A stretch of DNA of 64,000 bases, from IMG/VR virus record IMGVR_UViG_3300042541_001760, positions 186,001 through 250,000 of that record; one strand, written 5' to 3'. Under the pieces are notes generated by a model that ran no database searches, was not told the DNA's origin, and saw only the letters and a program-made list of their open reading frames with translations. The translations under genes were made by a program, and so were the position numbers. This document shows, one piece after another, positions 10,096 through 42,040 of this stretch; the stretch's first letter is position 1, and the number at the start of each line of letters is the position of its first letter.

Positions 10096-11466
10096 TTAAT
10101 TATCAAGAAAAAAGTAACCATTACCTTGTGATATTAAATTTTCCCTAACCGATTCAGGTAAGGTTTCCTCTAACTTATCTCCTGAACCATAAATGTTAAG
10201 GAAGGTCAGGTCTTTTAAGTTTTCTATTGAACTTGGTAATGATTTTAATTGTTTGTTATTAGGTAGTATAAGATAACCTAAATTTGTTAGTTTTCCAAGT
10301 TCATCAGGTAATGATTTAACAATATTTTCTAATTGTAAAGTCGTTAAATTTGTAAATTCGCCTATTGATGCTGGAATGTCTATCGCAAGATCTTCTTTAG
10401 ATTTATTAATGAATGATAACATATCTATGTCTCTTGGTAAACTTTCAAACAATTCCTCAAAGCCATATAGAGCCACGAATTTACCCGCTGAACTATCAGG
10501 GTAAGTTATGTTAACTTGGTTCGTAGATTGATTAACCAATCCTTTTGCGAATTCAGGTTTGAAGTATTCTTTAAGGTCGGGTGCTTTATTATTTAAAAAA
10601 TCAACCAACTCAATTCTATGGTCTAATCTATCCATAAACTGATTAGATGGGAAGTGAAATTGGAATCTGTCTTGGGGTAATCCTGTTCTTCCTCCGACAG
10701 GTCCACCCTCATCGTTAGATAATAACACATAAAGAGGTCCGTCTTTAACATATCCCCTAAAATAACTTGAACTTGGTGGTGATGTACACCATCTTGATTC
10801 ACCCTTTTCGTAGTCATAATAACCACCATACCAAGATGCCGCTTCTTGACCTTTTTCACCCCCATCTGAAATCTTAACCACTGTATAGTTGTCTCCAACA
10901 TATTCAACGGTCGCACCAGGATGTGAAAAACCTTTTCTTTCTTTACGAATTTCTTTTTTAACTTCTGACTTAGCTAATTTATTCTTAATCTTCTCAGGTA
11001 GTTCAAAATTATTTAGGAATTTGAAAAGTTTAGTTGGTGTAAATTTATTGATATCTCTCCATACAACAGGAAAATATTGTTTGTATTTTGTGAATTTTTT
11101 AAGGTCATCTGTTAATTTAAACAAATCCTCCATAAATAAATCACGTGCTCTTTCAACACTACCTGAGTCGTCAGTTTCGGGACTCTCATAGTTCTTTAAC
11201 ATCCAATTAACATATTGACCCGGTTGAATCTTTTTTAAATTCTCAGGACTAAAATCCGCATCGTTAAAATCCGCAGGTTTTTTTGTGGTTGGATCGGCAA
11301 ATATGATATCTGCCAATTTATTTATATCCATTAAAGCTTTTGAGCCTTTACCGGGTATTACATCTTTCTTAGGTTTTGTATATTTGTCAATCAATACATC
11401 AAAACGACTTTGTTCCGTTAGAATATTACGTAACAATGTGTTTAATTTTATATTTTTAATTTTCAT
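10096..11466 (-). CDS. Protein with central WCTS domain and C-terminal leucine-rich repeats
   Basis: SRWCTS motif; IPASIGEFTNLTTLQL, LPDELGKLTNLGYLIL, LPSSIENLKDLTFLNI repeats. Confidence 0.85.
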   Translation of the reverse strand: MKIKNIKLNTLLRNILTEQSRFDVLIDKYTKPKKDVIPGKGSKALMDINKLADIIFADPTTKKPADFNDADFSPENLKKIQPGQYVNWMLKNYESPETDDSGSVERARDLFMEDLFKLTDDLKKFTKYKQYFPVVWRDINKFTPTKLFKFLNNFELPEKIKNKLAKSEVKKEIRKERKGFSHPGATVEYVGDNYTVVKISDGGEKGQEAASWYGGYYDYEKGESRWCTSPPSSSYFRGYVKDGPLYVLLSNDEGGPVGGRTGLPQDRFQFHFPSNQFMDRLDHRIELVDFLNNKAPDLKEYFKPEFAKGLVNQSTNQVNITYPDSSAGKFVALYGFEELFESLPRDIDMLSFINKSKEDLAIDIPASIGEFTNLTTLQLENIVKSLPDELGKLTNLGYLILPNNKQLKSLPSSIENLKDLTFLNIYGSGDKLEETLPESVRENLISQGNGYFFLDN

Positions 11467-11496
11467 ATCTATTATATATTTTGCTAAGTTATTAAA

Positions 11497-13311
11497 TTAA
11501 TACCAAATATAAAAACCGGGACCTTCTTCTTTCATCCTTGCTCTTACTTCTTCGGGTATGATTATATCAGGATTAGATCCCTCCAATAGGATGAAATCTA
11601 ACTCTTCTAATTTTGCTAATGATTTGGGTAATGACTTTAGTCTAGGGTTGTTGGGTAATCCTAAAACAGATAACCTACTTAGATTACCAATTGATTCGGG
11701 TAACTCCTCAACAACGCCAGTCAAACTTAAATTCTCAAGATTACTAAATCTATCTATGTCGTTTGGTATATCTATTTTTATTGACCCATCTTTACTCTTA
11801 TTCTTTATTACTAACTCAGTGATGGTGTCAGGTAATGAATCAAAAAGTTCTTTTAATCCATATAGGGCAATGTATTTACCTTCGTTTGATGATGGTAACT
11901 CAATTACTGCTGAGTCCTTGAATACAAAATTGGTTGCGAACTTAGTTTTAAGGGATTCTTTTAGTTTGGCCATCATAGGTAAATTTAGTATGGCTATCTC
12001 ACCTTCACTTAAACTACCAATATTCTTGTTAGATAAAGCCTCAACTTTTTTCTTTAGGTAGTATTTCATTGTGTCAGAATCAGAGTTCCTAACTTGACCT
12101 GCGGTTAATTCGTGACCTAAAGCAATATATTTCTTTCTTAAATTTGGTGTTAGGCTATTGAATTGTTCATCACTTACTTTCCTATTAACAATCTCTAACC
12201 AATACTCAACCTCATTTTCATTAGCGAAAGTATCAAAGAGATTATCACCGACTTTTGAGTTTCTTATTTTATCTATAAGTACTTTTTCGTCAGATGTTAA
12301 TGGTTTTGGTTTGAATACGCCCTCCAATCCTTTTAATTTAGGTATTTTAGTTAATATCTCACTCCAAGGAATATTGTTATGACCTGAATATCTACCTGAG
12401 TTTGTACCATCCGCCAATGACATATCCCCATCAGGGTCAACCAATATAACAACCGCAAAGTTTACATCAGAATAATCCTTATCTTGGTCTATCACATAGT
12501 ATAATGTTCTCTCGTTGTCTAATCTATAGTTATAGAATAAGTTTGATGTTCCCTCACGAGATGTACACCAACTTCTACCATTCTTTAACTTAATACACTG
12601 GTCTCTCGTCTTTGGTTGGAATATTAATAAGTTATTCTCATTGTATACTTCCTCAATATCAGATACATCTGTTTTTGTTTCTGTGTCGTCGGATTTAACT
12701 GACGCATCAATATAATGTTCAAAATCTGTAAAACTTAGTGAGGTTGCCAATGGCATTTGCTCATATAACTGATTAAAGTTATCCAAGTACGCTTGAACAT
12801 AATACATTATTACATCTTCCGTTAGATTTGGATTCTCTTTCTTAAATTTCTCTGACAATATTTTTAGTAGAAACTTGGGGTAAGATTGGTCAATAACTTT
12901 TTGTAAATCCAAGAATTTATACTTGGTGATGTCCTTACCTTTACCGAATGCGTCCTCAATCTCCAAAAACTTTCTAATGGTTTTCTTAAGAGACACATTT
13001 TCAATACCCCCTTCTTTCTTTTTGAACTCCTTAAAAAGATCGGATTCTCTTTTTTGAGTTCTCTTTAAAGCAATAATGTTTTTTAATTCACTATATGAAT
13101 ATCTTGATAAATCTCTTTTCTCAACAGGTAACCCGTTTTTGTATTTTTCAAAATCGTCAATGTATCCACCTATGGTTTTTTCGTCATCCTTAGTATCTTG
13201 TAAAAATTTACCGATTAACTTCGCTTTTATTTTATCGGATACTTCTTTAAGTAACTTTTTAGGTAACGGGCTTTCAACCACAACGGACGATAATAAATTT
13301 ACTAACTTCAT
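11497..13311 (-). CDS. Paralogous WCTS-domain plus leucine-rich-repeat protein
   Basis: RSWCTS motif; LPESIGNLSRLSVLGL, LPKSLAKLEELDFILL repeats; C-terminal region aligns with 10096..11466. Confidence 0.85.
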   Translation of the reverse strand: MKLVNLLSSVVVESPLPKKLLKEVSDKIKAKLIGKFLQDTKDDEKTIGGYIDDFEKYKNGLPVEKRDLSRYSYSELKNIIALKRTQKRESDLFKEFKKKEGGIENVSLKKTIRKFLEIEDAFGKGKDITKYKFLDLQKVIDQSYPKFLLKILSEKFKKENPNLTEDVIMYYVQAYLDNFNQLYEQMPLATSLSFTDFEHYIDASVKSDDTETKTDVSDIEEVYNENNLLIFQPKTRDQCIKLKNGRSWCTSREGTSNLFYNYRLDNERTLYYVIDQDKDYSDVNFAVVILVDPDGDMSLADGTNSGRYSGHNNIPWSEILTKIPKLKGLEGVFKPKPLTSDEKVLIDKIRNSKVGDNLFDTFANENEVEYWLEIVNRKVSDEQFNSLTPNLRKKYIALGHELTAGQVRNSDSDTMKYYLKKKVEALSNKNIGSLSEGEIAILNLPMMAKLKESLKTKFATNFVFKDSAVIELPSSNEGKYIALYGLKELFDSLPDTITELVIKNKSKDGSIKIDIPNDIDRFSNLENLSLTGVVEELPESIGNLSRLSVLGLPNNPRLKSLPKSLAKLEELDFILLEGSNPDIIIPEEVRARMKEEGPGFYIWY

Positions 13312-13329
13312 TTTATATATGTAATTTAT

Positions 13330-13337
13330 TATAAATA
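13330..13337 (-). promoter_or_regulatory. Putative late promoter TATTTATA
   Basis: Exact motif 18 nt upstream of ATG 13311. Confidence 0.6.
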
Positions 13338-13356
13338 CCTATAAAGTCAGAAAAAA

Positions 13357-14202: not shown

Positions 14203-14251
14203 AATATTTTTTATAGAAGTATAACCAATTTATTAGACTTAATCAACCTTC

Positions 14252-14371: not shown

Positions 14372-14405
14372 AGTTTCTAAGTTTTTAGGGTGGTTGATTG
14401 TTTTA

Positions 14406-14476: not shown

Positions 14477-14686
14477 ATGTTTGTTAAAAATAAAAATATT
14501 ATGGAAAATATCGTAGAAACACTATTCGCAAAAGACAACTCAAAACCTGAAGGTGAGTGTAAAACATGTAAAAATAAAGTCAACCCGTTACAAAGTGGTT
14601 TAATTTGGTTCTCAGTTTGGATGTTAATAATGTCATTATATGGTCACGTAGTTTTTTTTAAAAAAATATTTGGTCTTATTTTTTAA
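14477..14686 (+). CDS. Small membrane protein with CxxC motif (start may be 14501)
   Basis: CKTCK followed by one hydrophobic helix. Confidence 0.6.
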   Translation: MFVKNKNIMENIVETLFAKDNSKPEGECKTCKNKVNPLQSGLIWFSVWMLIMSLYGHVVFFKKIFGLIF

Positions 14687-15620
14687 ATCTGACATTCAAT
14701 CTGACATACATATCCCCTAACCCGTTGTTCCTGAACCCCTTTGATTTTAATCTTAGGGGTTTTGTTGTATCAAACTCATCTGGCATCTTAATAGCCAACT
14801 TACCATCAGGGTGTGGTATCTCAAAACTATCCGACTTTAACTCATCAAGATTAAAAAACTTATTGTATATGAGATCGTTATTAACCTTCTCAAAATCTTC
14901 CAATGGTTGGACATTAAATTTTATGAGTAAGTTACCATAACTACCATTTATAAAATCCCCTTTACCTTGAGCCTTAATGAATTGTCCATTATCAATTCCG
15001 TGAGGTATGGCAATATTAATTGAGTCCATCATATCTTTTGTTCCTGAACCAACACAAGAGTGGCAGGTGGTCTTAAATGTAAATCCTCTACCACCACATC
15101 CATTACAAGCGGTTCTAACCATCTGAACAAACATACCGGTACCTACTCTTTGTGTTATTGATCCGGCGCCACCGCACATTCCACATTGTATCCTTTCTCC
15201 ACCACTACCACTACAATCCTGACATTGGTGTTTTCTATTATATACTATATTTTTTTGAGCTGACTTATATGAATCCAATACACTTATATTAACATCAACC
15301 ACTTTATCAGGGGCTTGTCTTTGTTGTTGTTGGGGATTACCTCCACGACCACCACCGAAGAACTGAGCAAACAAATCTTCCATAGATCCACCTCCACCAC
15401 CAAATCCTGCCATTGGGTTGTTTCTTTGGTTATCGTATCGTTTTCGTTTATTATCGTCTCCAATCGTATCATAAGCCTGAGCAACCTCCTTGAATATATT
15501 CTCATCCCCTCCTTTATCGGGGTGATGCTCAACCGCTTTCTTCCTATACGCTTTTTTTATTTCATCTTGGGTTGCGGTTTCGGAAACTCCTAACACTTCA
15601 TAATAATTGGGTTGTGCCAT
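14676..15620 (-). CDS. dnaJ: DnaJ chaperone
   Basis: J-domain with HPD, G/F-rich linker, four CxxCxGxG repeats, DnaJ C-terminal domain. Confidence 0.95.
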   Translation of the reverse strand: MAQPNYYEVLGVSETATQDEIKKAYRKKAVEHHPDKGGDENIFKEVAQAYDTIGDDNKRKRYDNQRNNPMAGFGGGGGSMEDLFAQFFGGGRGGNPQQQQRQAPDKVVDVNISVLDSYKSAQKNIVYNRKHQCQDCSGSGGERIQCGMCGGAGSITQRVGTGMFVQMVRTACNGCGGRGFTFKTTCHSCVGSGTKDMMDSINIAIPHGIDNGQFIKAQGKGDFINGSYGNLLIKFNVQPLEDFEKVNNDLIYNKFFNLDELKSDSFEIPHPDGKLAIKMPDEFDTTKPLRLKSKGFRNNGLGDMYVRLNVRFKK

Positions 15621-18053: not shown

Positions 18054-19352
18054 TTACTGTGTTTTTCTATTGTAATTCAGTAAGTTACTCATTTTATTTA
18101 TTTCTTCGTTCAACAACTTAGTTTTCTTATCTTGTGTTGACTCTAATTGATTCATAATCTTATTAGCCTTTGTGTTACTTTTATTAGTAGTGTTTGTCTC
18201 TCCTTTAGTAACTTCACCAGCCTCATCAGTAACGACCGGTTGGGGTGATTTATTATAGGCTTGTTTTTTAAGTGCCCCCAATAAATTATCCTTTCTGATT
18301 TTATTTCTGTTTTTATTAACAGGTGTCTCAACCGCATTTGCCCACTTAGGATTATTACCAGTTCTAGATGAACCTTCAATATTGTCTGTTACCCAATCTT
18401 CATTCGGGTGAATTTCATCATACATTAAGTTCTCTTGACCTGCGGATGAAAATGCTTCAACATATTCCTCAACTGCGTCAGATGCTTGGTATGTCTTTTT
18501 TGCCATCTTTTTATCCATTTGTCCGTTAGATTCAGGGAAATGTTCTGCATCCATAGTATAATCTTCTTTAGAACCATTTTTAAGGTAGTCCTTCATCTTT
18601 TGAGTTACAGATTTAATGTAATCATCATTTTCTTTTTTAGATTTACCAATTGCCGTTTCGTATGTTGCCAATCCTTTAGGTTTTGACATTTTTTTAATAT
18701 TGTCTTTCTCCTCTTTAACAATCTTTTCAATCATATCAATCATCTCATCTTCGGTTAATTTGATAGATTCTTTAACTTGATATTCTTTACCATCAACTTC
18801 AAAGTCATCATCTCCTTTACGTTTTGCTTTTGCTAATGCTCCTGTAAACGCATTACCTTCTTCCATTTCTTCGTCAGTTTGATGTTTTTTTGACTTTCTT
18901 AACATTTTAAAATCTTCAGCGTCAATTTTGTTATTTTTATTCTTATCCATTTTTTTCTGTCCACCGAATAATGCTTCAGTCATTTCAGCACCAGCATATC
19001 TTTTGTGACTCTCACAAGCCTGTGCGTCATAATCTTCACCATCTTCATTACAAACTCTTGATAATTTTTCAGAGGGGTCGAAATCCATATCGGTACTTTC
19101 CATCATGCCACCATATCCACATTCGTTACATTGACCTTCATTCATAGTTCCACCACATTGTTCACAAGTTTCTCCTTCTTCCATCTCTTCATCCATTGAT
19201 ATTTCTTGCCATTCATCCTCTGTCGTCATATCATCATCAATTTCATTGACTTTGGATTTGATTTTATTTACTAGTGATTCGGCTCTTTCTTCTAATGACT
19301 CCTTTAATGTTTTTTTAACAATTGAATCAATATAGTTATTTACGTTTTTCAT
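18054..19352 (-). CDS. Acidic putative prohead core/internal head protein
   Basis: Very E/D/K/M-rich; CxxC-CxxC segment; EF-hand-like DKNKNNKIDAED; many hydrophobic-x-E-(G/S/A) sites; own late-type promoter. Confidence 0.5.
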   Translation of the reverse strand: MKNVNNYIDSIVKKTLKESLEERAESLVNKIKSKVNEIDDDMTTEDEWQEISMDEEMEEGETCEQCGGTMNEGQCNECGYGGMMESTDMDFDPSEKLSRVCNEDGEDYDAQACESHKRYAGAEMTEALFGGQKKMDKNKNNKIDAEDFKMLRKSKKHQTDEEMEEGNAFTGALAKAKRKGDDDFEVDGKEYQVKESIKLTEDEMIDMIEKIVKEEKDNIKKMSKPKGLATYETAIGKSKKENDDYIKSVTQKMKDYLKNGSKEDYTMDAEHFPESNGQMDKKMAKKTYQASDAVEEYVEAFSSAGQENLMYDEIHPNEDWVTDNIEGSSRTGNNPKWANAVETPVNKNRNKIRKDNLLGALKKQAYNKSPQPVVTDEAGEVTKGETNTTNKSNTKANKIMNQLESTQDKKTKLLNEEINKMSNLLNYNRKTQ

Positions 19353-19365: not shown

Positions 19366-19373
19366 TATAAATA
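19366..19373 (-). promoter_or_regulatory. Putative late promoter TATTTATA
   Basis: Exact motif 13 nt upstream of ATG 19352. Confidence 0.6.
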
Positions 19374-21272: not shown

Positions 21273-21899
21273 TTAGTCAGTTTTTTTTCTTGACGCGATT
21301 ATTTTACCCCACTTAGATTTAAATTTTTCATAATATTGTCTAAGTTTTTGTATCATTGAGTCAAAGTCCTGGTCAACTTTTACAGTTTCACAATTGATAT
21401 ACACTCCGTTTGTCTCTCCCACTCTAAAAATGAAATCCAAATCAAAATCAATAATCTTACCTGACCACTCAGCACTATCGCTATATAGGTTTAATTGATT
21501 AAAGTCGGTCATTTCGGATACCTCGGATACAAATTCATCCATAGTTTCCTGAAACGCTTTTTTATCATCGGTAGTTAATTCCAAGGCCTTCTTATCGTTT
21601 CCGTGTATCATTAACACACCACCAGATATTCTATATCCTTGTTGTTTTGAATCTTTATTATTATCTTTCTTATCTTCATCAAAATCTATTTCACTCTCCA
21701 CAGATCCGGGAACATTAACTCTTTGAGTTATTTCGTCTCCTGTGTTCTCAATATCACCAGAGTCCTTAAATGTTTGTTCATTAATAATACCGTATTTTTT
21801 TTTGATACCATTAATATCCTCAGATATCTGAGTGTTATTTTTTTGAAGCATCTCTCTTGAGGCTTTCAATAATCTTTGTATTTCTTCGTGGTTACTCAT
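21273..21899 (-). CDS. Hypothetical protein (208 aa)
   Basis: ORF in operon; N-terminal leader ending IINEQ. Confidence 0.75.
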   Translation of the reverse strand: MSNHEEIQRLLKASREMLQKNNTQISEDINGIKKKYGIINEQTFKDSGDIENTGDEITQRVNVPGSVESEIDFDEDKKDNNKDSKQQGYRISGGVLMIHGNDKKALELTTDDKKAFQETMDEFVSEVSEMTDFNQLNLYSDSAEWSGKIIDFDLDFIFRVGETNGVYINCETVKVDQDFDSMIQKLRQYYEKFKSKWGKIIASRKKTD

Positions 21900-23665: not shown

Positions 23666-24466
23666 TTACATATATTCAAAAAGAACCGAACTTTCATTTC
23701 GTAATTTACGAAGAGCCTTCTCTTTAATCTGTCTCACACGTTCTTTAGTAAGATTGAAGTCGTCACCGATGTCCTCCAAAGTTCTTGGTGTCCCCGTTAG
23801 ACCGAAATAATCCTCAATGATGGATCTCTCTCTTTTGTCCAAAATACCTAACACATCCATAAGTTTTTCTTTCAACTTATCTTTGGTATCAAAACCATCG
23901 TCAGGCATTACACAATTCTCATTTACGATTACATCAATAAGTGTATCTCCGTCTTCATTAATCTCGTCGTTAAGATTGACCATTGAAGGTAGTGAGGTGA
24001 ACTTATCGGACAATTGCTTGCCATTGTTCTCAACCTCTTTTTTAGCTCGTTGTAGGTCTTGTACGACATTAACAGGGAGTCGTATGGTTCTTGCGTTCTC
24101 GTTAAGAGATTGGAGAATACATTGACGAACCCACCATACCGCATATGATATAAATCGTAGGTTCTTATTCCAATCAAAATTCTCAATGGCTTTAATCAAT
24201 CCCATATTACCTTCGGCAATTAAATCGGGGAATGGTAATCCTTGATTCTGATATTGTTTTGCCACGGTAATAACAAAACGTAAATTACCTTCAACTAACT
24301 CCTGATGTATCTCATCTTTCTGTCTATCTGTTAGGTTTCCTGTGGCCATCATAGCAGCCAACTCACGTTCTCTATCAGGTGTCATAACCTTAATCTTTCT
24401 TAGATCTTTAAGATAAGATTGAATCTCGTCTTGGTTGATCGGTATTCCTGTGTTTTTCTCTCTCAT
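23666..24466 (-). CDS. rpoD: Sigma-70 family RNA polymerase sigma factor, Bacteroidota primary-sigma type (no region 1.1)
   Basis: NLRFVITVAKQY, DLIAEGNMGLIKA, FISYAVWWVRQ, TIRLP, TLEDIG...LTKERVRQIKEKALRKLR. Confidence 0.93.
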   Translation of the reverse strand: MREKNTGIPINQDEIQSYLKDLRKIKVMTPDRERELAAMMATGNLTDRQKDEIHQELVEGNLRFVITVAKQYQNQGLPFPDLIAEGNMGLIKAIENFDWNKNLRFISYAVWWVRQCILQSLNENARTIRLPVNVVQDLQRAKKEVENNGKQLSDKFTSLPSMVNLNDEINEDGDTLIDVIVNENCVMPDDGFDTKDKLKEKLMDVLGILDKRERSIIEDYFGLTGTPRTLEDIGDDFNLTKERVRQIKEKALRKLRNESSVLFEYM

Positions 24467-25011: not shown

Positions 25012-25041
25012 ATGATATTTATCGTGATAAACAAACTTATT

Positions 25042-25683
25042 ATGAATAAAAGAATATCAATTACAAGAGACCAACTGGTTGAACATATTAGAAAATCAAT
25101 TTCTAAAAATTTAATGGAACAGGACTATTCGTCCGATATAAATAGACCAACTCAACCTAGAGAAAAAGGGGTTAAGACAATATTTGGTGATAAGTATTCA
25201 AGATATATTCCAAATGATGTTATTCGTTATATGAGAAAGAACCCGGCTCTTATATTTGAAAGGTTATTTGAACTATATGGTGAGGACGCCTATATGTATT
25301 TAGATAAAGCAAAAGAAAAGATGGGTGATTCACCTGAACCTATGATGGAACAAGATATGGATGATGATTACGATGATGAAGATGAGGAAGAAGAACAGGA
25401 TCCATTGATGGACACATTAAAAGATGTTGTTAACAACAATGGTGAATTCAGTGAAAGTGACATTGATGACATTAATGATTATGGGGGTTCTAAAAGATCG
25501 TTTAGAGGTTCAATTTATTTAGATGGAATGGTACCCGAAACTGACGATAAAGAATTTGATAGAAAAGTGGCAATTAAAATTATGGAGTTCTTCGCATCAG
25601 GACTGAACATTAACAGATATGTCGGTGGTGTTGGTTTCAAACAACGAAGTATGACAAACCCATTTGATAACGAGAATTTTTAA
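25042..25683 (+). CDS. Acidic hypothetical protein with N-terminal leader (ORF track start 25012)
   Basis: TATTTATC at 25016 favours ATG 25042; leader ends NLMEQ. Confidence 0.75.
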   Translation: MNKRISITRDQLVEHIRKSISKNLMEQDYSSDINRPTQPREKGVKTIFGDKYSRYIPNDVIRYMRKNPALIFERLFELYGEDAYMYLDKAKEKMGDSPEPMMEQDMDDDYDDEDEEEEQDPLMDTLKDVVNNNGEFSESDIDDINDYGGSKRSFRGSIYLDGMVPETDDKEFDRKVAIKIMEFFASGLNINRYVGGVGFKQRSMTNPFDNENF

Positions 25684-25777: not shown

Positions 25778-26395
25778 ATGAAAAACATATTATTTTTAGA
25801 TGAACAAATTAAAAGAATCTACGAAGTGTCATATACTATTTCGGAATCAAGAGGTAAGAATAGACAGAACATTATTAATGATGTGGTAATAGAATCCTTA
25901 AAATCCGATATATACTATAATGATTGTGTGTTTAAAAAAGAAGTTATAATCCCCGGAACAAAATTACTATGGGGTAAATACTTTCCTGTTGATATATGCG
26001 TATATAAAGATAATACTCTAATTGAGATTATTTTAAATAAGGCGCCTTCATCAAATATAAAGCAAAATAGAATTAATTCACTTAATGGTATTAATTCAGA
26101 CATAACAAGATTATCTAAATTAGAAAATATAAAAATTTCTTTAATTAATTTTTTACCTAAGATATCCCCTTTCTTTAAAAGAGATGAAAGTATTAAATCT
26201 TTTGAGAAAAATGAGCCTTTTTTCTTATCTACTTCTGGCGCCTTTTATAAATTCGATGTTGATGAAATATATGTTACTTTTGAAATTAATAATTTATATA
26301 AATGTAATTCAAAAGTTGATGTTAGAAATTTATTTTTGGTGAATCCTATAAAAAATGTGAATTTAATTCAAAAAAATTATAAAAGTTTAACTTAA
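25778..26395 (+). CDS. Putative type II restriction endonuclease
   Basis: Adjacent to and convergent with an MTase; PVD...E...K.P.SN.KQN..N segment; shares the very AT-rich composition of the MTase. Confidence 0.45.
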   Translation: MKNILFLDEQIKRIYEVSYTISESRGKNRQNIINDVVIESLKSDIYYNDCVFKKEVIIPGTKLLWGKYFPVDICVYKDNTLIEIILNKAPSSNIKQNRINSLNGINSDITRLSKLENIKISLINFLPKISPFFKRDESIKSFEKNEPFFLSTSGAFYKFDVDEIYVTFEINNLYKCNSKVDVRNLFLVNPIKNVNLIQKNYKSLT

Positions 26396-33250: not shown

Positions 33251-33258
33251 TATTTATA
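33251..33258 (+). promoter_or_regulatory. Putative late promoter TATTTATA
   Basis: Exact motif 15 nt upstream of ATG 33274; second copy at 33267-33274. Confidence 0.6.
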
Positions 33259-33273
33259 ATAAAAAATATTTAT

Positions 33274-33954
33274 ATGAAAAACTTATTTAATGATATCTCT
33301 CAAGATGAGAGAAACAGGATTTTGGAAATGCATAAATCCGCAACTAGAAAAAACTATTTGTCAGAACAAACACCCGCTCCCGCACCTGCTCCTGCAACTG
33401 CTCCTGCGGCGGCACCTGCCGGGGTTCCTAAAGGTCCGGTTGGGGGTGTAACTAAAAAACCTGCGGTAGTGCCAGGTGGTGATAAACCACAGGGTTCTGC
33501 GGGGATTTATAAAGAAATTGATGTCGAGACTTTCAATCCAAAATTTCAAATGTGCTGGAACGAAAACACTGCAAGTGGAAAAAAATACATTTCACTAAAA
33601 CAAAAGGTTGAGAATGGGGATGATGAAGAGGAAAAATTGATGGTGTATAATAATAACAATATTAGACAATCAATGTTTAATACCATTAACCAAGTTTATT
33701 TGAAGTCTCTAACTAAACCTATGAGTAGTGACGAGTTAGGCAGATTATGGAACACCGTAAAAACTTACCCAATTACATACTATTTCACTGACCCGAAAGT
33801 ACGACCAAGAGTGTCAAATACGATTTCATCAACTGTTGAAGAAGCAATAAAAAACGTTTATACGAATGAGAATGAAATGAAAATAGATTATTTGAATACG
33901 TTTAATTGCGCAATGAAGGGTATTCAAGGTGCTCAACCTACACAAGGTACTTAA
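33274..33954 (+). CDS. Hypothetical protein with leader ending YLSEQ and Pro/Ala-rich linker
   Basis: ORF with own promoter and terminator, inverted relative to neighbours. Confidence 0.8.
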   Translation: MKNLFNDISQDERNRILEMHKSATRKNYLSEQTPAPAPAPATAPAAAPAGVPKGPVGGVTKKPAVVPGGDKPQGSAGIYKEIDVETFNPKFQMCWNENTASGKKYISLKQKVENGDDEEEKLMVYNNNNIRQSMFNTINQVYLKSLTKPMSSDELGRLWNTVKTYPITYYFTDPKVRPRVSNTISSTVEEAIKNVYTNENEMKIDYLNTFNCAMKGIQGAQPTQGT

Positions 33955-35461: not shown

Positions 35462-35701
35462 ATGCCAAAATACGTAGAAATAACCTCAGTAACAGGATCC
35501 TCACCATATAACATATATATTTGTGACGTGGCTCAAGTGTCTTGTACTTGGATATCAACAATTACATCAGGTAACTTACCTTATTCGTTTGAGTTACCTT
35601 CCATTTTTTCAAGTTATTCCGATTTTGCCGTTAAGGTGGTTGACTCATCCAATTGTAATATGATAAAATTTAGTGGGACAAGTTATCCTGAATGTCCTTA
35701 A
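35462..35701 (+). CDS. Small Cys-containing structural-type protein, paralogous to the N-terminal domain of 42019..42759
   Basis: I.S.TG..PY.IYICD....C..I.TIT shared motif; TATTTATT at 35436. Confidence 0.75.
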   Translation: MPKYVEITSVTGSSPYNIYICDVAQVSCTWISTITSGNLPYSFELPSIFSSYSDFAVKVVDSSNCNMIKFSGTSYPECP

Positions 35702-35712
35702 TTAGTTAAAAT

Positions 35713-37185
35713 ATGAGTAATTGTAATAATTGTCTACCTACCTCAATAACTTGGTCACCTGCTAACAACGGAACATTAAATTGTACGGGAACATCCGCTA
35801 GTACGGTATATACCTGCTATTCCAACGAAACTATATTTTTTACTGATTGGGACTTTTCTTCCGCCAATGTATTATATCAAGATTCCATAGATGGCGGTGT
35901 TATTCCTGTTACAGGTGTGACTATTAATTATCCATACGGTATCGCAAATACTAATAGTAAATTTTGGGTTCAGGATTCTGGAAATACGAGTATTAACGAA
36001 TACTCAATTTCATATTCTCCGTTATTGCCAGGTAATTCTGTTATTTTGACAGGCCCAATCAATAAGCCAATTACGGGAACTAATCAATTAAATTCGTTGG
36101 TCGCAATTAGCGAAGATGTTTTAGTTGGTGGCGGTCAAAGTACTTTTGATGGAAATAAAATAATTAAATACCCTGTTAGTGGTTCGTCAATTGAATCGGT
36201 AGGTTTGTTTGAATTACCTTATACTAGCGGGTCAATTAATGACATAAAATATGACGTTAAAAAACAAACACTGGTAATTACATATTACAACGATGATTTA
36301 GGAAAATACTACGTATCCGAATACACCACAGGTGGAACTATGGTTAATGAGATTGAAATCATCCCTTACGTAAACAACAAACAAATAGTTTCATTAGCAA
36401 CATATAATGGTGTTAATTATATGTTAAGTGGAGGTTCCTCAACTTGGACTTGGTATAGTTACGATAACTTAACAAATTTGAATTTAGTTAACACAGGTAT
36501 ATCTACCTTATATTCCCAACCAAGTTCATCACAAGCCTTAGGTGTTTTCAGATCACCATTCACATCAACAGGGTCGAGTTATTGCCTTTCCACAATGTAT
36601 TCATCAACATCACAATATGATGGTAACTATTATTCAGGTGGAACATATGATGGGTATTTATTTTACGTAGGTGACGGATCTACACCTGGGTTAATATACT
36701 ATAACACAGGGTCAACATCTTGGTGTTTATCCACAAGTTTAGGTGGTACTTGTATTTTGTTTGGGGGTAATAGTTGTCAAAGTCCCACACCTAACTTTTC
36801 AAGTGGTTTTTTCTCAAACGCGATGTGTCCAACGCCAACTCCATCACCAACAAATAATTGTACCGTTTTAAATATTGATGCATTTTTTGATTGTGACATT
36901 ATACCACCAACACCATCAATAACACCAACGATGACAGTTACCCCAACGTCAGGATACACTTATCCAACGCCAACACCGACGATGACCCCATCTCCAACTG
37001 CGTCAAGTCAATCATGTTCTAATGTTAACTTCTGTTTCAATATACAGAATTTTGGACCAACACCGACACCCACAATGACAATGACGCCAAGTAGTGGTTC
37101 TGGTAGAAATACGGTCGCAGGTGGAACTAGATCGTTTATCACAATTAATGACAATTTAGTTTGTCCTCCGCCACAAATAGTTTAA
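35713..37185 (+). CDS. Ser/Thr/Gly-rich putative tail fibre/adhesin-like protein with Pro-Thr repeats
   Basis: Composition and PTPT linkers resemble 40140..41753. Confidence 0.65.
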   Translation: MSNCNNCLPTSITWSPANNGTLNCTGTSASTVYTCYSNETIFFTDWDFSSANVLYQDSIDGGVIPVTGVTINYPYGIANTNSKFWVQDSGNTSINEYSISYSPLLPGNSVILTGPINKPITGTNQLNSLVAISEDVLVGGGQSTFDGNKIIKYPVSGSSIESVGLFELPYTSGSINDIKYDVKKQTLVITYYNDDLGKYYVSEYTTGGTMVNEIEIIPYVNNKQIVSLATYNGVNYMLSGGSSTWTWYSYDNLTNLNLVNTGISTLYSQPSSSQALGVFRSPFTSTGSSYCLSTMYSSTSQYDGNYYSGGTYDGYLFYVGDGSTPGLIYYNTGSTSWCLSTSLGGTCILFGGNSCQSPTPNFSSGFFSNAMCPTPTPSPTNNCTVLNIDAFFDCDIIPPTPSITPTMTVTPTSGYTYPTPTPTMTPSPTASSQSCSNVNFCFNIQNFGPTPTPTMTMTPSSGSGRNTVAGGTRSFITINDNLVCPPPQIV

Positions 37186-37187
37186 TA

Positions 37188-37793: not shown

Positions 37794-37834
37794 ATTACAT
37801 ATGGTAATATATTAGTTAAATTTGTAAATAATAC

Positions 37835-40111
37835 TTATATATCAAGCTTAACCAAGAATTGTTGTATACTCTGTCTTTCTATGGGTGATTGTAACTTAGC
37901 AATAGCCATTAGGTCTCTAACATTGTCATATAAAGCCACTTCACTTATATATGATGGTACTCCTGCCGTCCAAGTCGGATTTGATGGGTAATTAAACTCG
38001 TTTTGATTTAGATTACACAACCATCTCATTTCATATATGGTCGCCTGTATTTCTGTTTCAATATTACCGTAGAAGTAATACTCATCTCCGAAGTTAAGGG
38101 TTTGTCCTGTTTGTCCAACTGTGGGTAATGTCACGTAATTATTTAAGTTATATGTAAGTGCCAAATCGTAATCGGACTTTGTGATATACAATGTGGTTCC
38201 TGTAATACCGCTAGTCGTGATTTTACCTCCAACTATGGTTGCCGATAATTGATTTGTTACATCTATTTTTTTCCATCCTGTCGGGCTTGGTTTTCCTTCT
38301 CCACTTACTTTCTGACATAGTATTTCAAAAGAATCATAAGTAAAATTACCAAGACACCCAAACTCATTTCCGAATGTAATTGCGATATCTTGACTAGTGC
38401 TATTACAAGTTTGATTAGGACCCAATATTGATGAATAATAATTACAATGTAATGAATTAGTATAGAAAAGGCTATTTGAGAATCTATATGTCACATACAT
38501 ATAATCAGTATTTCCCGTTAATACACCTTCTCCGTTTGGAGTTGATAGCACTAATCTCGGTGCCGGTAATGTCCAATTTCTGTTGGACTTATATGACATT
38601 GCCGCGATTATTTCCTCATCGTCAATAACTATCGTATTTAAATCGGGAAACACTTTACCTATTCTACTTGGGTATCCGTCAATTACGTTCGCATTTGTAT
38701 CCCAAAGATGATAATATCTATGACCCGGATTGTTCATATCCGTATTTTTATTTGAGGTTAGATAATGTTCTTGGAACAGTCCTAATGTTTCAAATTCTAC
38801 GTTTGGTGGGTCAACATAAAATGTTTGTCCTTGGCAACAGTCTGCTGATTTATGCCATTGTAACCAAGGTATTGTGAATCTGAAATTTCTTGCCATACCA
38901 ACCGTATTGGTTTCATTCAAAGGGTCATATGGTTGTAACGCAAATTTTTCACCATAAACAAAGTCAATGGTGTTATTAGTATAATGAACAATCGCTATTG
39001 CCTTTTGGTCTTTACCCGGTACAATGATTTTATCACCAAGAGAATTATAATAGTTAACAGAATCACTATCTGTTTGACCATTACTATTACTATATCCAAA
39101 GTATTCTTTACTACCCAAATAATTTACAGATCCAAAATTAGTATAATCCTTATAAGCAGAACCATTTAAACCTGCCGGTGATTCTGACCAAGGAATATTC
39201 ATATTCCATATATTAACATTAAATAAATCAACATCACATACAGATTCAAAATTAAAAACATCTTGATTCCAATGTGGTTCTGGCGTAGCACTGTCGTAGA
39301 AGTTAGTCATACCTGATGGGTACACCAAAACTCTCGCCTCACCTGTTACCGATGGGGTTGCATAGTTAGGAACATTTCTATCCACAGTGATTATATTACC
39401 ATTAACCCCAATAATTCTATATGTTAAAATTGGCGTACAACTTTGAAATGACATAAAACAAGATCTATCGCTTGGGGGTACTGGAGGGCATGGATTATAC
39501 GGTGAATAAACGGTTGTACATGGTGATGAAACCGAAGTATAAGTACAATTACAATTAGTTAATCCTAACCCATCATAATATATTGTAACAAAATCCCCTG
39601 CGGAAAATGAATATGTTGTTGCGGTATTACAAATACTCGGAACCGGAATTAAGGTCATAGTATTTTGACTAGGGCCTAAATTATTCATATCCACATAGTA
39701 ATTACCTGTCTTAACATATTCACTACCTGTTTTAGCACTCCAATTTGTAGGTAATGTGGTTGTGTCAGCACTAAAAAATCCTCTCATTGGGGCTACATTA
39801 TATACATTTGAAACTATAGAATCCATAAATGGTATTCCGTAAGTTGCTCCTGATAACGTATCAACATAATAAGGGTACTTAACATTTTGAAAATTGGCTT
39901 GGGGTACAGGCGCTCCATTTTGTGAATTAAAAGCGGGTTCTAACACAACACTATTTGTTTGATTAAAACCACTTATCGCGTTGTATGAAACCTCACTATC
40001 TCCAACTTGGAAATAAGTTATGTTAAAATTACCTTGTGATATTTTTTGTCTACCAATATCAGTAATTCTTGTATTAACTAAACCTGATGTATTTTTTAAT
40101 ATATAAGCCAT
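37835..40111 (-). CDS. Baseplate/tail-collar-type structural protein
   Basis: N-terminal TRITDIGRQKI..G...ITYFQVGDSE; C-terminal ISEVALYD...LMAIAKL..PI pattern of tail-collar/fibre-attachment proteins. Confidence 0.65.
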   Translation of the reverse strand: MAYILKNTSGLVNTRITDIGRQKISQGNFNITYFQVGDSEVSYNAISGFNQTNSVVLEPAFNSQNGAPVPQANFQNVKYPYYVDTLSGATYGIPFMDSIVSNVYNVAPMRGFFSADTTTLPTNWSAKTGSEYVKTGNYYVDMNNLGPSQNTMTLIPVPSICNTATTYSFSAGDFVTIYYDGLGLTNCNCTYTSVSSPCTTVYSPYNPCPPVPPSDRSCFMSFQSCTPILTYRIIGVNGNIITVDRNVPNYATPSVTGEARVLVYPSGMTNFYDSATPEPHWNQDVFNFESVCDVDLFNVNIWNMNIPWSESPAGLNGSAYKDYTNFGSVNYLGSKEYFGYSNSNGQTDSDSVNYYNSLGDKIIVPGKDQKAIAIVHYTNNTIDFVYGEKFALQPYDPLNETNTVGMARNFRFTIPWLQWHKSADCCQGQTFYVDPPNVEFETLGLFQEHYLTSNKNTDMNNPGHRYYHLWDTNANVIDGYPSRIGKVFPDLNTIVIDDEEIIAAMSYKSNRNWTLPAPRLVLSTPNGEGVLTGNTDYMYVTYRFSNSLFYTNSLHCNYYSSILGPNQTCNSTSQDIAITFGNEFGCLGNFTYDSFEILCQKVSGEGKPSPTGWKKIDVTNQLSATIVGGKITTSGITGTTLYITKSDYDLALTYNLNNYVTLPTVGQTGQTLNFGDEYYFYGNIETEIQATIYEMRWLCNLNQNEFNYPSNPTWTAGVPSYISEVALYDNVRDLMAIAKLQSPIERQSIQQFLVKLDI

Positions 40112-40115
40112 TTTC

Positions 40116-40123
40116 TATAAATA
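40116..40123 (-). promoter_or_regulatory. Putative late promoter TATTTATA
   Basis: Exact motif 4 nt upstream of ATG 40111. Confidence 0.6.
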
Positions 40124-40139
40124 CTTTATTAGTTGTTTT

Positions 40140-41753
40140 TTATGGGTTGTTAATAGACATAACATTAGTTTCTGGCGCCCCTGTGACATTACAACAAGTA
40201 CATCCATTAATTGATGAGGTACTTAGTATAAACACTTTATCGGTTGATTTAACGTAACAAGACAAGGGACTTAATTTAAGTATTGAAGTTATAACCGTTC
40301 CTGATATCACATCCACCCCTGATATTGTAATATTGTTATACGTTAAAGTGGTTGCAGTTGAATATTCCTTAGTGTTTGGTGGGCATATGCCGGTTGTTGA
40401 TCCAGATTGTGTTGAAGATGCGGTTGTTGGTGTTATACCTATAGGGACTCCATTTTTATGTACTTGAACAGTATTAGTTATACTTCCAAACGCCGGATTG
40501 GTCGCCACCATAAAATTATTATATTCGGATAAATCAAAAGTTATTATTGTACCGGATGGTAAGTTTGATATAATGTTATTATTTATGTCTCTAACAACAA
40601 CTTTAAATGTTAATTTTTTCTGTCCCACCCCTGTTGATACTATTGTATTATCTATTGTTAAATTATACGAATTTGTTGCCGGTCCGGCCGGAACGATTGC
40701 GTTCTGTTGTCTTACTGTTGACGATCCATCTTGTACCCAAATACTATAAGTACCCGCCGGTAAGTTATTAAACATTGGTGATTGTTGTGTTGTAATACCT
40801 CCATCTTTTGAATATATTACGGGTGGTTGACCGTTAAGGGGATTTATAATTAAAGATCCCGTAGAGTCGTTAACACAATTAGGGGCACTAATAGTTGGTG
40901 GATTTAAACTCATCACAGGCGCATTACAAGCCCCCGCATATGTGGTGGCATTACCCGCTGGTCCGAATAAAGTCCAACCACCAATTGGTGGAATACTCGC
41001 GTTCGTGTTTATTATCAATGTTGAGTCAATATCAACAAACCAATAAGCTTGTGATAATCCACCCCATCTCATATCGAGAGTACCAGAAATCCAAGTGGGT
41101 TTACCATTTACAATACTCCCCGTTGGTGTGAATGTATATAATGTTGTAATATTACCTGTAGTATATTGTAAACATAAATTAGGGTACACAACAGGAATTG
41201 GTGTCGGTGTTGGTGTAGGAGTTGGTGATGGTGTTTGACTAGGAACAATTAAAGAACAGGTTGTTGTTGCCGTATAATCAGACCCTCCGTTTGGCCAATT
41301 GTAGTCGGTTACTGTTACAGTATACACCCCATTAGAAGTGGCATTAGTTAAAGTAGGACCTAAAGTTCCTGTACTCCAAAGAATTTTATAAGGTGGTGTA
41401 CCACCCGATACTAACATAGTAATACTATTATTTAATAGATTTGGACTACAACTAATAGTCATTGGCGTTATTGTAACAATATCACACTGATTAACTCCTG
41501 TAACTCTATTACAGACATACAATGCGGTACATTCACCACAATTACCATAAGAACCCTCTAAAGTGACTCCTGGCGATAAAAAAGAATATGTGGGTGAATC
41601 AGGATACAATGAACCAGAACTAATAACAGTACAACAACCACTGAAATAATTGGGTATAATTACATACTTTATATCACCAATCGTTAATGTTGGAGAATTG
41701 GTTAGTGTAAACGTAAAACTGGAATCGCAACAGGATTTGAAATAATGGGTCAT
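40140..41753 (-). CDS. Putative tail fibre protein with Cys-rich N-module, two SprB-like repeats and PT linker
   Basis: VSGGTPPYKILWS...GVYTVTVTD; PNC...TGSL...NGQPP...FNNLPAGTYSIWVQD. Confidence 0.7.
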   Translation of the reverse strand: MTHYFKSCCDSSFTFTLTNSPTLTIGDIKYVIIPNYFSGCCTVISSGSLYPDSPTYSFLSPGVTLEGSYGNCGECTALYVCNRVTGVNQCDIVTITPMTISCSPNLLNNSITMLVSGGTPPYKILWSTGTLGPTLTNATSNGVYTVTVTDYNWPNGGSDYTATTTCSLIVPSQTPSPTPTPTPTPIPVVYPNLCLQYTTGNITTLYTFTPTGSIVNGKPTWISGTLDMRWGGLSQAYWFVDIDSTLIINTNASIPPIGGWTLFGPAGNATTYAGACNAPVMSLNPPTISAPNCVNDSTGSLIINPLNGQPPVIYSKDGGITTQQSPMFNNLPAGTYSIWVQDGSSTVRQQNAIVPAGPATNSYNLTIDNTIVSTGVGQKKLTFKVVVRDINNNIISNLPSGTIITFDLSEYNNFMVATNPAFGSITNTVQVHKNGVPIGITPTTASSTQSGSTTGICPPNTKEYSTATTLTYNNITISGVDVISGTVITSILKLSPLSCYVKSTDKVFILSTSSINGCTCCNVTGAPETNVMSINNP

Positions 41754-41799
41754 TTAATAATAATTCTTACAAACTAAATAATAATTGGTTATTTTTAGT

Positions 41800-41807
41800 T
41801 ATAAATA
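41800..41807 (-). promoter_or_regulatory. Putative late promoter TATTTATA
   Basis: Exact motif upstream of ATG 41753. Confidence 0.55.
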
Positions 41808-41845
41808 TCTTAATTAATGTTTTGTGGTATTAATATACCTTAGAG

Positions 41846-41853
41846 TATTTATA
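41846..41853 (+). promoter_or_regulatory. Putative late promoter TATTTATA
   Basis: Exact motif 4 nt upstream of ATG 41858. Confidence 0.55.
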
Positions 41854-41857
41854 TTAT

Positions 41858-42040
41858 ATGAAATTATTAAGAACAATAGAAAAGATGGTTACCGAATCTG
41901 AAAGAGCGTATGAAGAAGCATGTGAGAGAGGTGCTAAACCACAGGTGTTAGATAAATTAGAAAAAAACTACTTGGACTCACTTAAATTGATGTCTTTATA
42001 CGAGAGTGTTGAGAAAAATCAACAAGGGAAGACATCCTGA
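41858..42040 (+). CDS. Small protein (60 aa), leader MKLLRTIEKMVTES
   Basis: Own promoter motif; fills the gap between minus-strand genes. Confidence 0.6.
   Translation: MKLLRTIEKMVTESERAYEEACERGAKPQVLDKLEKNYLDSLKLMSLYESVEKNQQGKTS

What the first reader, a model, noticed from the sequence alone, without database searches (positions are those of the whole stretch)
10096..42040. Shared N-terminal leaders ending in hydrophobic-x-E|(Q/S): a capsid-targeting/processing signal
Seen: unrelated proteins start with basic or amphipathic leaders ending ILTE|Q (11466), VVVE|S (13311), TLKE|S (19352), IINE|Q (21899), NLME|Q (25042), YLSE|Q (33274), MVTE|S (41858) and TISE|S (25778). Most lie behind the late-type motif. 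Established: T4 internal proteins carry an N-terminal capsid-targeting sequence cleaved after Glu by prohead protease gp21. Inference: this may be an analogous system loading many accessory proteins into the head for injection.
Basis: inference. Interest (0 to 1): 0.6.

Follow-up and report, generated by a model that had tools for sequence, protein, structure and literature searches.

The report
Head-targeting leader peptides in jumbo phage
About 40 unrelated proteins of this 261-kb T4-like Bacteroidetes phage start with short, interchangeable leader peptides ending in hydrophobic-x-Glu, most likely tags that load them into the forming head and are then cut off by the head protease, as in phage T4 but on a much larger scale.

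Summary
The window belongs to a 261-kb uncultivated phage with a T4-type head module: gp20 portal, gp21-type S77 protease, acidic scaffold and gp23 capsid protein.

Profile searches of N-termini find 41 of 340 proteins with stereotyped leaders in at least five families, and 5 of these lie in the window. In 112 distinct metagenomic copies of the commonest 22-aa leader, the last residue is always Glu and P3 is almost always I, L or V. P1' is Q, S or N in about 70%, and conservation collapses at the next residue.

Tandem paralogs carry different leaders on 79%-identical cargo, and the switch falls exactly at E|Q. The motif hydrophobic-x-E-[S/Q] is most over-represented in the scaffold and a neighbouring core protein. 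The capsid protein has LINE|A where T4 gp23 is cut.

Leader genes are enriched behind the TATTTAT motif that also precedes virion genes. Best reading: T4-like capsid-targeting propeptides removed by the prohead protease (confidence about 0.7). Cleavage, packaging and injection remain untested. It is a new, greatly expanded variant of a known mechanism.

The parts
10096..11466 (-). 456-aa protein. 18-aa leader (nt 11413-11466) ending LTE|Q; C-terminal leucine-rich repeats.
   Evidence: family E HMM, E=7e-8. Orthologues in IMG/VR have a 13-aa leader ending h-h-x-E followed by conserved QSRF.
11497..13311 (-). 604-aa protein. 13-aa leader (nt 13273-13311) ending VVE|S; C-terminal leucine-rich repeats.
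   Evidence: family E HMM, E=2e-4.
13331..13337 (-). TATTTAT late-type promoter-like motif upstream of gene 11497-13311.
18054..19352 (-). 432-aa protein. 18-aa leader (nt 19299-19352) ending LKE|S.
   Evidence: Orthologues in five related complete genomes keep h-h-x-E at residues 15-20.
19367..19373 (-). TATTTAT motif upstream of gene 18054-19352.
21273..21899 (-). 208-aa protein. 41-aa leader (nt 21777-21899) ending INE|Q, with a core resembling family B, followed by a variable acidic linker.
   Evidence: 308 relatives in IMG/VR; the YG-h-h-x-E|Q site is conserved and is followed by length-variable sequence.
25042..25683 (+). 213-aa protein. 26-aa leader (nt 25042-25119) ending LME|Q. The start at 25042 is preferred over 25012.
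   Evidence: The orthologue in G002 (L474:1498-1797) has homologous cargo behind a leader resembling family A, inside a tandem array of leader genes. It has its own TATTTAT at 25016-25022.
25016..25022 (+). TATTTAT motif, its first base 26 nt upstream of the 25042 start codon.
25778..26395 (+). 205-aa protein. 23-aa leader (nt 25778-25846) ending ISE|S, resembling family B. No TATTTAT upstream.
   Evidence: (family B HMM, E=1e-7).
33274..33954 (+). 226-aa protein. 31-aa family C leader (nt 33274-33366) ending LSE|Q, then a Pro/Ala-rich linker.
   Evidence: E=5e-19. N-terminal copies in IMG/VR all end h-x-E, mostly followed by Q.
33251..33273 (+). Two TATTTAT motifs (33251-33257 and 33267-33273) upstream of gene 33274.
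41858..42040 (+). 60-aa ORF with a 13-aa N-terminus ending VTE|S. This is the weakest candidate.
   Evidence: TATTTAT at 41846-41852. No family or orthologue test was done.
41846..41852 (+). TATTTAT motif upstream of ORF 41858.

Best explanation
The leaders are capsid-targeting propeptides of the T4 type.

Inferred mechanism: each is a 13-42-residue amphipathic N-terminal helix that docks the newly made protein onto the prohead core, which consists of the acidic scaffold and associated core proteins. The gp21-type serine protease in the prohead then cuts after the Glu of the terminal hydrophobic-x-Glu motif, with S or Q preferred at P1'. This frees the mature cargo inside the head. Some cargo is probably ejected with the DNA.

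Shown here:
- the leaders, their families, their exact end at Glu and their interchangeability;
- the T4-type protease and head module;
- the same motif concentrated in the scaffold and core proteins and present at the capsid protein's T4-equivalent cleavage position;
- the association with a late-type promoter motif.

Inferred, not shown: docking to the core, cleavage, residence in the virion and ejection.
For: 1. T4-type head module at genome 49.6-59.1 kb: gp17-like terminase, gp20 portal (PF07230), S77 protease (PF03420, 83 bits), acidic 493-aa scaffold and gp23 capsid protein (PF07068), in the same gene order as T4. The protease aligns to T4 gp21 and PDB 5JBL and keeps ELNHP and SSRG, where the deposited inactive T4 chain has Ala.

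2. Leader A (22 aa) in 112 distinct IMG/VR copies: Glu22 in 112 of 112, and I, L or V at P3 in 111 of 112. P1' is Q 34%, S 22%, N 12%. Information content falls from 3-4 bits to about 0.4 bits immediately after. The leader always sits at the ORF start.

3. Leaders B and C also end in h-x-E.

4. Leader exchange. The adjacent paralogs L187:3253-3882(-) and L187:3909-4562(-) carry leader A and leader C on 79%-identical cargo that begins at E|Q. A cargo orthologue, P0020, carries a further leader type that also ends LLNE|S.

5. Among 340 proteins, [LIVMFY]xE[SQ] is most over-represented in the scaffold (14 against 1.7 expected, P=5e-9) and in the 242-aa protein at the gp67/68 position (6 against 0.85). 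Against composition-preserving shuffles the counts are 14 against 2.7 (P<=5e-5) and 6 against 0.93 (P=2.5e-4), while plain h-x-E is not enriched. The trend holds in five related complete genomes.

6. The capsid protein has LINE|A, invariant in six genomes, aligned with the T4 gp23 FLTE|A site.

7. 25 of 41 leader genes, against 66 of 299 others, have TATTTAT within 45 nt upstream (odds ratio 5.5, P=8e-7). The motif also precedes the scaffold, protease, portal, baseplate and large virion genes.

8. Selection acts on the peptide: 148 of 392 identical-residue codon pairs between leader A paralogs use different codons.

9. In an AlphaFold2 model of one leader protein, the leader has pLDDT about 50 and the cargo 76-93.

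10. Leader A is phage-specific. There are at least 120 loci in IMG/VR, against one phage-like 3.3-kb contig in 596 Gbp of prokaryotic genomes. 13 of 15 leader-A contigs tested carry the S77 protease, including 5 of 5 complete genomes.

11. T4 precedent: 10-19-residue propeptides target internal proteins to the core and are removed by gp21. Residues 8 and 10 of the IPIII leader govern processing (PMC9026906).
Against: - There is no proteomic, N-terminomic or expression evidence for this phage or any phage carrying these leader families, and none is cultured.
- The protease co-occurrence is not discriminating, because all tested contigs belong to one clade.
- The leaders show no detectable sequence similarity to the T4 leader and are longer (13-42 aa against 10-19).
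- A large paralog family of about 100-120-aa proteins has a similar N-terminal helix without a following h-x-E, so such a helix need not be a cleaved tag.
- Some cargos are cell-wall enzymes (GH24 lysozyme; GDSL plus PG-binding plus SLT) that could act in lysis instead.
- The protease-leader complex prediction gave no verdict.
- The HMM-defined leader set partly contains the motif itself, so the 29/41 against 41/299 comparison is partly circular.
Confidence: 0.7

Rival explanations
1. The leaders are uncleaved N-terminal interaction helices, for example coiled-coil docking or oligomerisation modules. They would tether diverse proteins to a common phage or host partner without proteolysis or head packaging.
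For: The leaders are amphipathic helices. The MDIQVNK-type paralog family has a similar helix (QLERVVIKWL) with no cleavage motif after it. In gene 18054 and its orthologues, the sequence right after the Glu is also conserved and helical.
Against: This does not explain why three unrelated leader sequences all terminate in hydrophobic-x-Glu with conservation collapsing at P1'. It does not explain why leader swaps break exactly at E|Q. It does not explain why the same 4-mer is concentrated in the scaffold and core proteins, the canonical protease substrates.
Confidence: 0.14
2. The leaders route proteins to another destination or control their timing. They could be pro-segments keeping cell-wall hydrolases and other enzymes inactive, or membrane-associated, until late infection, without residence in the capsid.
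For: Three cargos carry peptidoglycan-related domains: GH24 lysozyme at genome 124470, GDSL plus PG_binding plus SLT at 76565, and PG_binding at 96007. Leader genes have late-type promoters.
Against: The leaders are charged and lack a hydrophobic core. The genome's true signal peptides form a separate cluster. Most cargos are not wall enzymes. In T4, gp21-type proteases are known to act inside the prohead (PMC9026906). A leaderless amidase-like gene (genome 110815, judged from its N-terminus only) could serve as endolysin.
Confidence: 0.07
3. The shared N-termini are by-products of DNA-level processes. These would be duplication or recombination of promoter-plus-5' segments, or constraints on the translation-initiation region, with no function for the peptide.
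For: Leader genes often lie in tandem arrays and share an upstream TATTTAT context.
Against: Synonymous differences between paralog leaders are abundant: 148 of 392 identical-residue codon pairs, with Ser, Arg and Leu encoded by different codon families. The residue pattern is conserved across hundreds of divergent contigs, with an invariant Glu at the boundary.
Confidence: 0.03
4. Chance: a loose four-residue pattern in an AT-rich, Glu/Ser/Lys-rich proteome.
For: The bare motif is only about 2x enriched at N-termini, and about 10% of any 45-aa window has it. The 60-aa ORF at 41858 has no further support.
Against: N-terminal similarity far exceeds shuffled controls: 240 pairs score at least 40, against 15 for shuffled N-termini. 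The HMM families are significant. Hundreds of external copies exist.
Confidence: 0.02

Closest known systems
Phage T4 capsid targeting sequences (IPI, IPII, IPIII, Alt, gp67/68 propeptides) processed by prohead protease gp21
   Same: - Same protease family (S77) and same head-module architecture.
- A short N-terminal propeptide shared by otherwise unrelated proteins and ending in hydrophobic-x-Glu.
- The capsid protein carries the motif at the equivalent position.
- The scaffold is rich in sites (PMC9026906).
   Different: - No sequence similarity to the T4 leader.
- Leaders are 13-42 aa, against 10-19.
- There are at least five interchangeable leader families instead of essentially one.
- About 41 cargo genes (12% of the proteome) instead of a handful.
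- Marked S/Q preference at P1'.
- Cargos include LRR proteins and peptidoglycan hydrolases.
- Cleavage and packaging are unproven here.
phiKZ / 201phi2-1 / SPN3US giant-phage head protein propeptides cut by gp175/gp245
   Same: - A jumbo phage with a diverged gp21-like protease cutting C-terminal to Glu after a 3-residue motif.
- Ser is preferred at P1' in SPN3US.
- Many head-internal ejection proteins.
- Two SPN3US substrates have 20- and 24-residue propeptides (PMC10052503).
   Different: - Those proteases use a small residue at P3 (A-x-E; S/A/G-x-E in phiKZ, from my own knowledge). Here P3 is I, L or V in 111 of 112 leader A copies.
- Most of their propeptides are long (111-254 aa) and not stereotyped.
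- Only 9 SPN3US substrates are known, and 42 head proteins are uncleaved.
Hypervariable internal-protein loci of T-even phages (my own knowledge: Repoila et al. 1994; Comeau and Krisch 2005)
   Same: A conserved leader with rapidly exchanged, unrelated mature parts, and recombination at the leader boundary.
   Different: That case is restricted to one or two loci per genome. Here there are dozens of genes in tandem arrays across the genome, with exchange between different leader families.
Freshwater Bacteroidetes 'bS21' huge phages (PMC9723584)
   Same: Same kind of phage: 290-330 kb, predicted Flavobacteriia-type hosts, and a TerL-portal-protease-MCP block with late expression. The leader-bearing IMG/VR genomes of 257-322 kb look like this group.
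   Different: The paper does not mention leaders or propeptides. This genome lacks a bS21 gene.

Membership tests
T4-type capsid-targeting propeptide system | The phage encodes a gp21-family (Peptidase S77) prohead protease with catalytic His and Ser. | tested here: met
   PF03420 at 83 bits (cut-off 27). 33% identity to T4 gp21 with ELNHP and SSRG conserved. PDB 5JBL, E=2e-14.
T4-type capsid-targeting propeptide system | A T4-like prohead core and shell module: gp20 portal, acidic scaffold, gp23 capsid protein. | tested here: met
   PF07230 and PF07068. The gene order matches T4 20-67-68-21-22-23. The scaffold is 493 aa and strongly acidic.
T4-type capsid-targeting propeptide system | A short N-terminal propeptide ending in (L/I)-x-Glu. 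| tested here: met
   Leader A: Glu in 112 of 112, and I/L/V at P3 in 111 of 112. Leaders B and C. Window genes.
T4-type capsid-targeting propeptide system | The same leader sits on unrelated mature proteins, so it is a transferable module. | tested here: met
   152 protein pairs share the N-terminus but not the rest of the protein. Leader swaps occur on homologous cargo at E|Q.
T4-type capsid-targeting propeptide system | The propeptide is removed by the prohead protease during head maturation. | not testable with these tools
   Only indirect evidence: motif enrichment in the scaffold and core proteins and the capsid protein site. The complex prediction gave no verdict.
T4-type capsid-targeting propeptide system | The mature cargo resides in the head and is ejected into the host. 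| not testable with these tools
   No virion proteome exists; the phage is uncultivated.
T4-type capsid-targeting propeptide system | Sequence homology of the leader to the T4 IP leaders. | tested here: not met
   The leader A profile finds nothing in the T4 genome. That search had no positive control. By eye there is no similarity beyond an M-K start and the terminal h-x-E.
phiKZ/SPN3US-type propeptides | Cleavage motif with a small residue at P3 (A-x-E or S/A/G-x-E). | tested here: not met
   P3 is I, L or V in 111 of 112 copies of leader A. Scaffold sites are [LIVMFY]xE[SQ].
Sec/lipoprotein signal peptides | An N-terminal hydrophobic h-region. | tested here: not met
   The leaders are charged amphipathic helices. 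The genome's real signal peptides cluster separately.

The most novel reading that the evidence does not exclude
A whole clade of uncultivated 260-320-kb freshwater Bacteroidetes phages would use a readable N-terminal 'zip code': at least five interchangeable leader families, all ending hydrophobic-x-Glu. This would load some 40-50 different proteins per genome (about 12% of genes) into the head for delivery into the host, including LRR proteins and cell-wall hydrolases. That would be the largest leader-defined packaged-effector repertoire known. It would also allow the ejected proteome of uncultured phages to be predicted from sequence alone.
Probability: 0.45. Interest if true: 0.8.

Novelty: new variant of a known kind. 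Interest (0 to 1): 0.62.

Why it matters
- If the leaders are cleaved packaging tags, the packaged and possibly injected protein set of hundreds of uncultivated jumbo phages can be listed from sequence. Those proteins are candidates for host take-over and anti-defence functions.
- The mature N-terminus of each cargo is predicted to the residue, which simplifies expression and structural work.
- The protease specificity, hydrophobic-x-E|S/Q, is inferred from three independent substrate classes.
- The leaders are natural, short, exchangeable tags that could be tested for loading foreign proteins into large capsids, as was done with the T4 leader.
- A single T4 mechanism would have been expanded into a major organising principle of a genome.

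Tried and rejected
- Complex prediction of the protease with residues 1-40 of a leader A protein: no verdict (score 0.00; controls not run). This is not evidence either way.
- Pfam and PHROGs scans of 25 or so leader proteins: no family covers any leader. Only cargo domains were found: LRR, lysozyme, SLT, GDSL and PG_binding.
- Full-text literature search for eight leader peptide strings: no paper. A search on capsid targeting, prohead protease and jumbo phages returned only T4 and SPN3US work.
- megablast and tblastn against GenBank phages: no near relative. Leader A is absent from 50,697 records. The nearest isolates by capsid protein are the Flavobacterium immuto phages, at 40% identity.
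- The leader A profile found nothing in the immuto or T4 genomes, but that search had no positive control.
- Foldseek search of the modelled cargo of genome gene 141047 against the PDB: nothing significant.
A DNA pattern was used instead. It also hit an unrelated internal segment of another protein family, which I excluded because it is not N-terminal.
- bS21 gene: absent.
- No read-mapping tool was used. No alternative genetic code was needed.
Full report
**What the sequence is.** The window is bases 186001-250000 of a single 261,052-bp viral contig with 32% GC. CheckV puts it at about 89% complete. GenBank phages contain no close relative. The best capsid-protein matches are huge uncultured phages, a Microcystis phage and the Flavobacterium immuto phages, at 40-43% identity, and T4 at 25%. 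Many proteins have Flavobacteriia-style signal peptides.

Outside the window, at genome 49.6-59.1 kb, lies a T4-type head module. It holds a large terminase, a gp20 portal (PF07230), a 242-aa and a 150-aa protein at the gp67/68 position, an S77 prohead protease (PF03420), a 69-aa protein, a 493-aa very acidic scaffold and a gp23 capsid protein (PF07068). The protease is 33% identical to T4 gp21. It keeps the His and Ser that are replaced by Ala in the inactive crystal form 5JBL.

**Checking the observation.** The four-residue pattern alone is weak: it is about twice as dense in the first 45 residues as elsewhere.

The real signal is that the N-termini fall into families. Pairwise local alignment of residues 2-36 gives 240 pairs scoring at least 40, against 15 for shuffled N-termini. 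Of the 278 pairs that share an N-terminus, 152 share nothing in the rest of the protein. Profile HMMs built on five families recover 41 of 340 proteins. The families are:
- A: the 22-aa type beginning MKKVIRLTESDL;
- B: beginning MNLQENIQRIKE;
- C: containing ERxRILEMH;
- D: beginning MKILISESQ;
- E: a short type ending h-h-x-E, whose profile also matches the second half of family A.

Five of the 41 are window genes: 10096, 11497, 18054, 25778 and 33274. Gene 21273 has 308 relatives with a conserved 41-aa leader ending YG-h-h-x-E|Q and a length-variable acidic linker after it. Gene 25042 has an orthologue whose cargo is homologous but whose leader resembles family A, inside a tandem array of four leader genes. 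Genes 10096 and 18054 keep the site in all orthologues. Only the 60-aa ORF at 41858 remains unsupported beyond its motif and promoter.

**Anatomy of the leaders.** A degenerate search for leader A in IMG/VR hit more than 585 stretches. In 129 occurrences it always starts the ORF, often in several tandem genes per locus. Among 112 distinct copies:
- residues 1-22 carry roughly 2-4 bits each;
- Glu22 is invariant;
- P3 is I, L or V in all but one;
- P1' is Q 34%, S 22%, N 12%;
- from residue 24 onward the information content is about 0.4 bits.

Residues 3-12 were fixed by the search pattern. Residues 13-22 were not.

Leader B copies mostly end within a few residues of the MMG core in G-h-x-E or h-h-x-E. 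N-terminal leader C copies all end in Y-h-x-E, usually followed by Q and then a low-complexity linker. Three unrelated leader sequences therefore share only their position, their amphipathic character and their last three residues.

Conservation acts on the peptide, not the DNA. Between paralogs, 148 of 392 identical-residue codon pairs use different codons.

**Modularity.** Stripping the leaders and comparing cargos across families gave five cross-family hits. The clearest is a pair of adjacent genes on one contig, L187:3253-3882(-) and L187:3909-4562(-). Their 187-residue cargos are 79% identical from the first residue after Glu, but one has leader A and the other leader C.

Orthologues of genome gene 141047 all carry leader A except one, which has yet another leader type ending LLNE|S. 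An AlphaFold2 model of that protein gives pLDDT about 50 for the leader and 76-93 for the cargo. This suggests an appendage that is not part of the fold.

**Link to the protease.** Three lines connect the motif to the prohead protease independently of the leaders.

1. Among 340 proteins, the motif [LIVMFY]xE[SQ] is most over-represented in the scaffold (14 against 1.7 expected) and next in the 242-aa core-position protein (6 against 0.85). Against shuffles of each protein's own composition, the values are 14 against 2.7 (P<=5e-5) and 6 against 0.93 (P=2.5e-4). Plain h-x-E is not enriched, so the signal lies in the S/Q at P1'. The homologous proteins of five related complete genomes show the same tendency.

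2. The capsid protein's N-terminal region aligns with that of T4 gp23. It has LINE|A, invariant in six genomes, where T4 has the FLTE|A maturation site.

3. 13 of 15 leader-A contigs carry an S77 protease, including all five complete genomes of 257-322 kb. The two without it are 35-43% fragments. Because these contigs form one clade, this co-occurrence is permissive rather than discriminating.

In two relatives, leader D genes sit inside the head module itself.

**Timing.** TATTTAT lies mostly 11-30 nt upstream of the start codons of the scaffold, protease, portal, gp25-like baseplate gene and several very large virion genes. It does not precede the ribonucleotide reductase or SbcCD genes. 25 of 41 leader genes have it, against 66 of 299 others (odds ratio 5.5, P=8e-7).

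**Distribution.** In 596 Gbp of prokaryotic genomes it finds only one locus. That locus is a 3.3-kb contig of a Bacteroidetes MAG on which the leader gene sits beside a homologue of the window's 2067-aa virion protein, so it is a mis-binned phage fragment. No GenBank phage has leader A.

The cultured relative, Flavobacterium phage immuto, has its own repeated leaders: one type on four genes and one ending ITE|S on two. The principle therefore probably extends beyond this clade.

**Cargo.** Most cargos have no known domain. The exceptions are two LRR proteins in the window, a GH24 lysozyme, a GDSL/PG-binding/SLT protein and a PG-binding protein. The modelled cargo of gene 141047 has no structural match.

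**Interpretation.** The best-supported reading is the T4 mechanism. In T4, 10-19-residue propeptides give internal proteins affinity for the core and are removed by gp21, and the residues at positions 8 and 10 of the leader control processing (PMC9026906). The giant phages phiKZ and SPN3US use diverged gp21 homologues that cut after A-x-E, with Ser favoured at P1' (PMC10052503). Here the P3 residue is of the T4 type.

I put 0.7 on 'cleaved capsid-targeting propeptides'. Ejection into the host is less certain. Rivals are an uncleaved docking helix (0.14), another destination or a pro-enzyme role (0.07), a DNA-level by-product (0.03) and chance (0.02).

The main weaknesses are these:
- The evidence is entirely in silico.
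- There is no similarity to the T4 leader.
- A large paralog family has a similar helix but no cleavage motif.
- The complex prediction gave no verdict.

**Novelty.** The mechanism is known. What is new is its form here: multiple interchangeable leader families, about 12% of the genes, lengths up to 42 aa, a clear S/Q preference at P1', and occurrence in hundreds of uncultivated contigs. I found no description of it in the literature searched. I rate it a new variant of a known kind, with interest 0.62.

Noticed in passing
window 2339-3403 and 6750-7061 (- strand); also genome 156.4-158.5 kb, 176.9-177.6 kb and 256.8-258.1 kb: A paralog family of at least 16 small proteins (100-122 aa), all starting with an MDIQVNK-type sequence followed by a QLERVVIKWLN helix. 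The helix resembles the core of leader A, but no hydrophobic-x-Glu follows it. Six of the 16 have TATTTAT upstream. Function unknown.
   Followed up: partly
window 23666-24466 (-): Phage-encoded RNA polymerase sigma factor (phrog_351, E=1.5e-53). It is a candidate for recognising the TATTTAT late-type motif.
   Followed up: no
window 3400-6607 (-): Four consecutive genes encoding proteins with Bacteroidetes-type signal peptides, ending in motifs such as GYGQ, GYSQ and LLSQ. Several more are elsewhere in the genome. They cluster apart from the leaders.
   Followed up: no
window 33367-33430, and genome 258150-258839 and 137479-138636: Pro/Ala- or Pro/Glu-rich low-complexity linkers begin directly after the predicted cleavage Glu in several leader proteins.
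   Followed up: no
window 35462-35701 (+), 42019-42759 (-), 40140-41753 (-), 35713-37185 (+), 42767-45061 (-): Cys-rich putative fibre or virion proteins. Two of them share an N-terminal YICDV-containing segment, suggesting a shared attachment module.
   Followed up: no
window 52789-58992 (-): A 2067-aa protein behind a TATTTAT motif. A homologue sits next to a leader A gene on the only 'bacterial' hit, a 3.3-kb contig of a Bacteroidetes MAG (L255). That contig is therefore probably mis-binned phage DNA.
   Followed up: partly
window 14676-15620 (-) and 7077-7668 (-): By their N-terminal sequences, a DnaJ-domain protein and adjacent glutaredoxin- and thioredoxin-like genes. Not scanned against family libraries.
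   Followed up: no
genome 1-4500 (outside the window; L001): The contig start is a repeat-rich stretch giving Gly/Val-rich and Cys/Trp-rich pseudo-ORFs on both strands. It may be a terminal repeat or an assembly artefact.
   Followed up: no
L375, L381, L382, L161 and L383 (Flavobacterium phage vB_FspM_immuto_3-5A, MW353176.1): This cultured T4-like phage has its own repeated N-terminal leaders: one type on genes at 1803, 103762, 117587 and 118588, and another, ending ITE|S, on genes at 25470 and 111631. Its acidic scaffold is annotated as 'DNA polymerase phi-like protein', which is probably a mis-annotation.
   Followed up: partly
L376:5105-6061 (+) and L378:2713-3159 (+): In two related complete genomes, a leader D gene is inserted inside the head module itself. 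In G001 it lies between the protease region and the scaffold; in G003 it lies between the two core-position genes.
   Followed up: no
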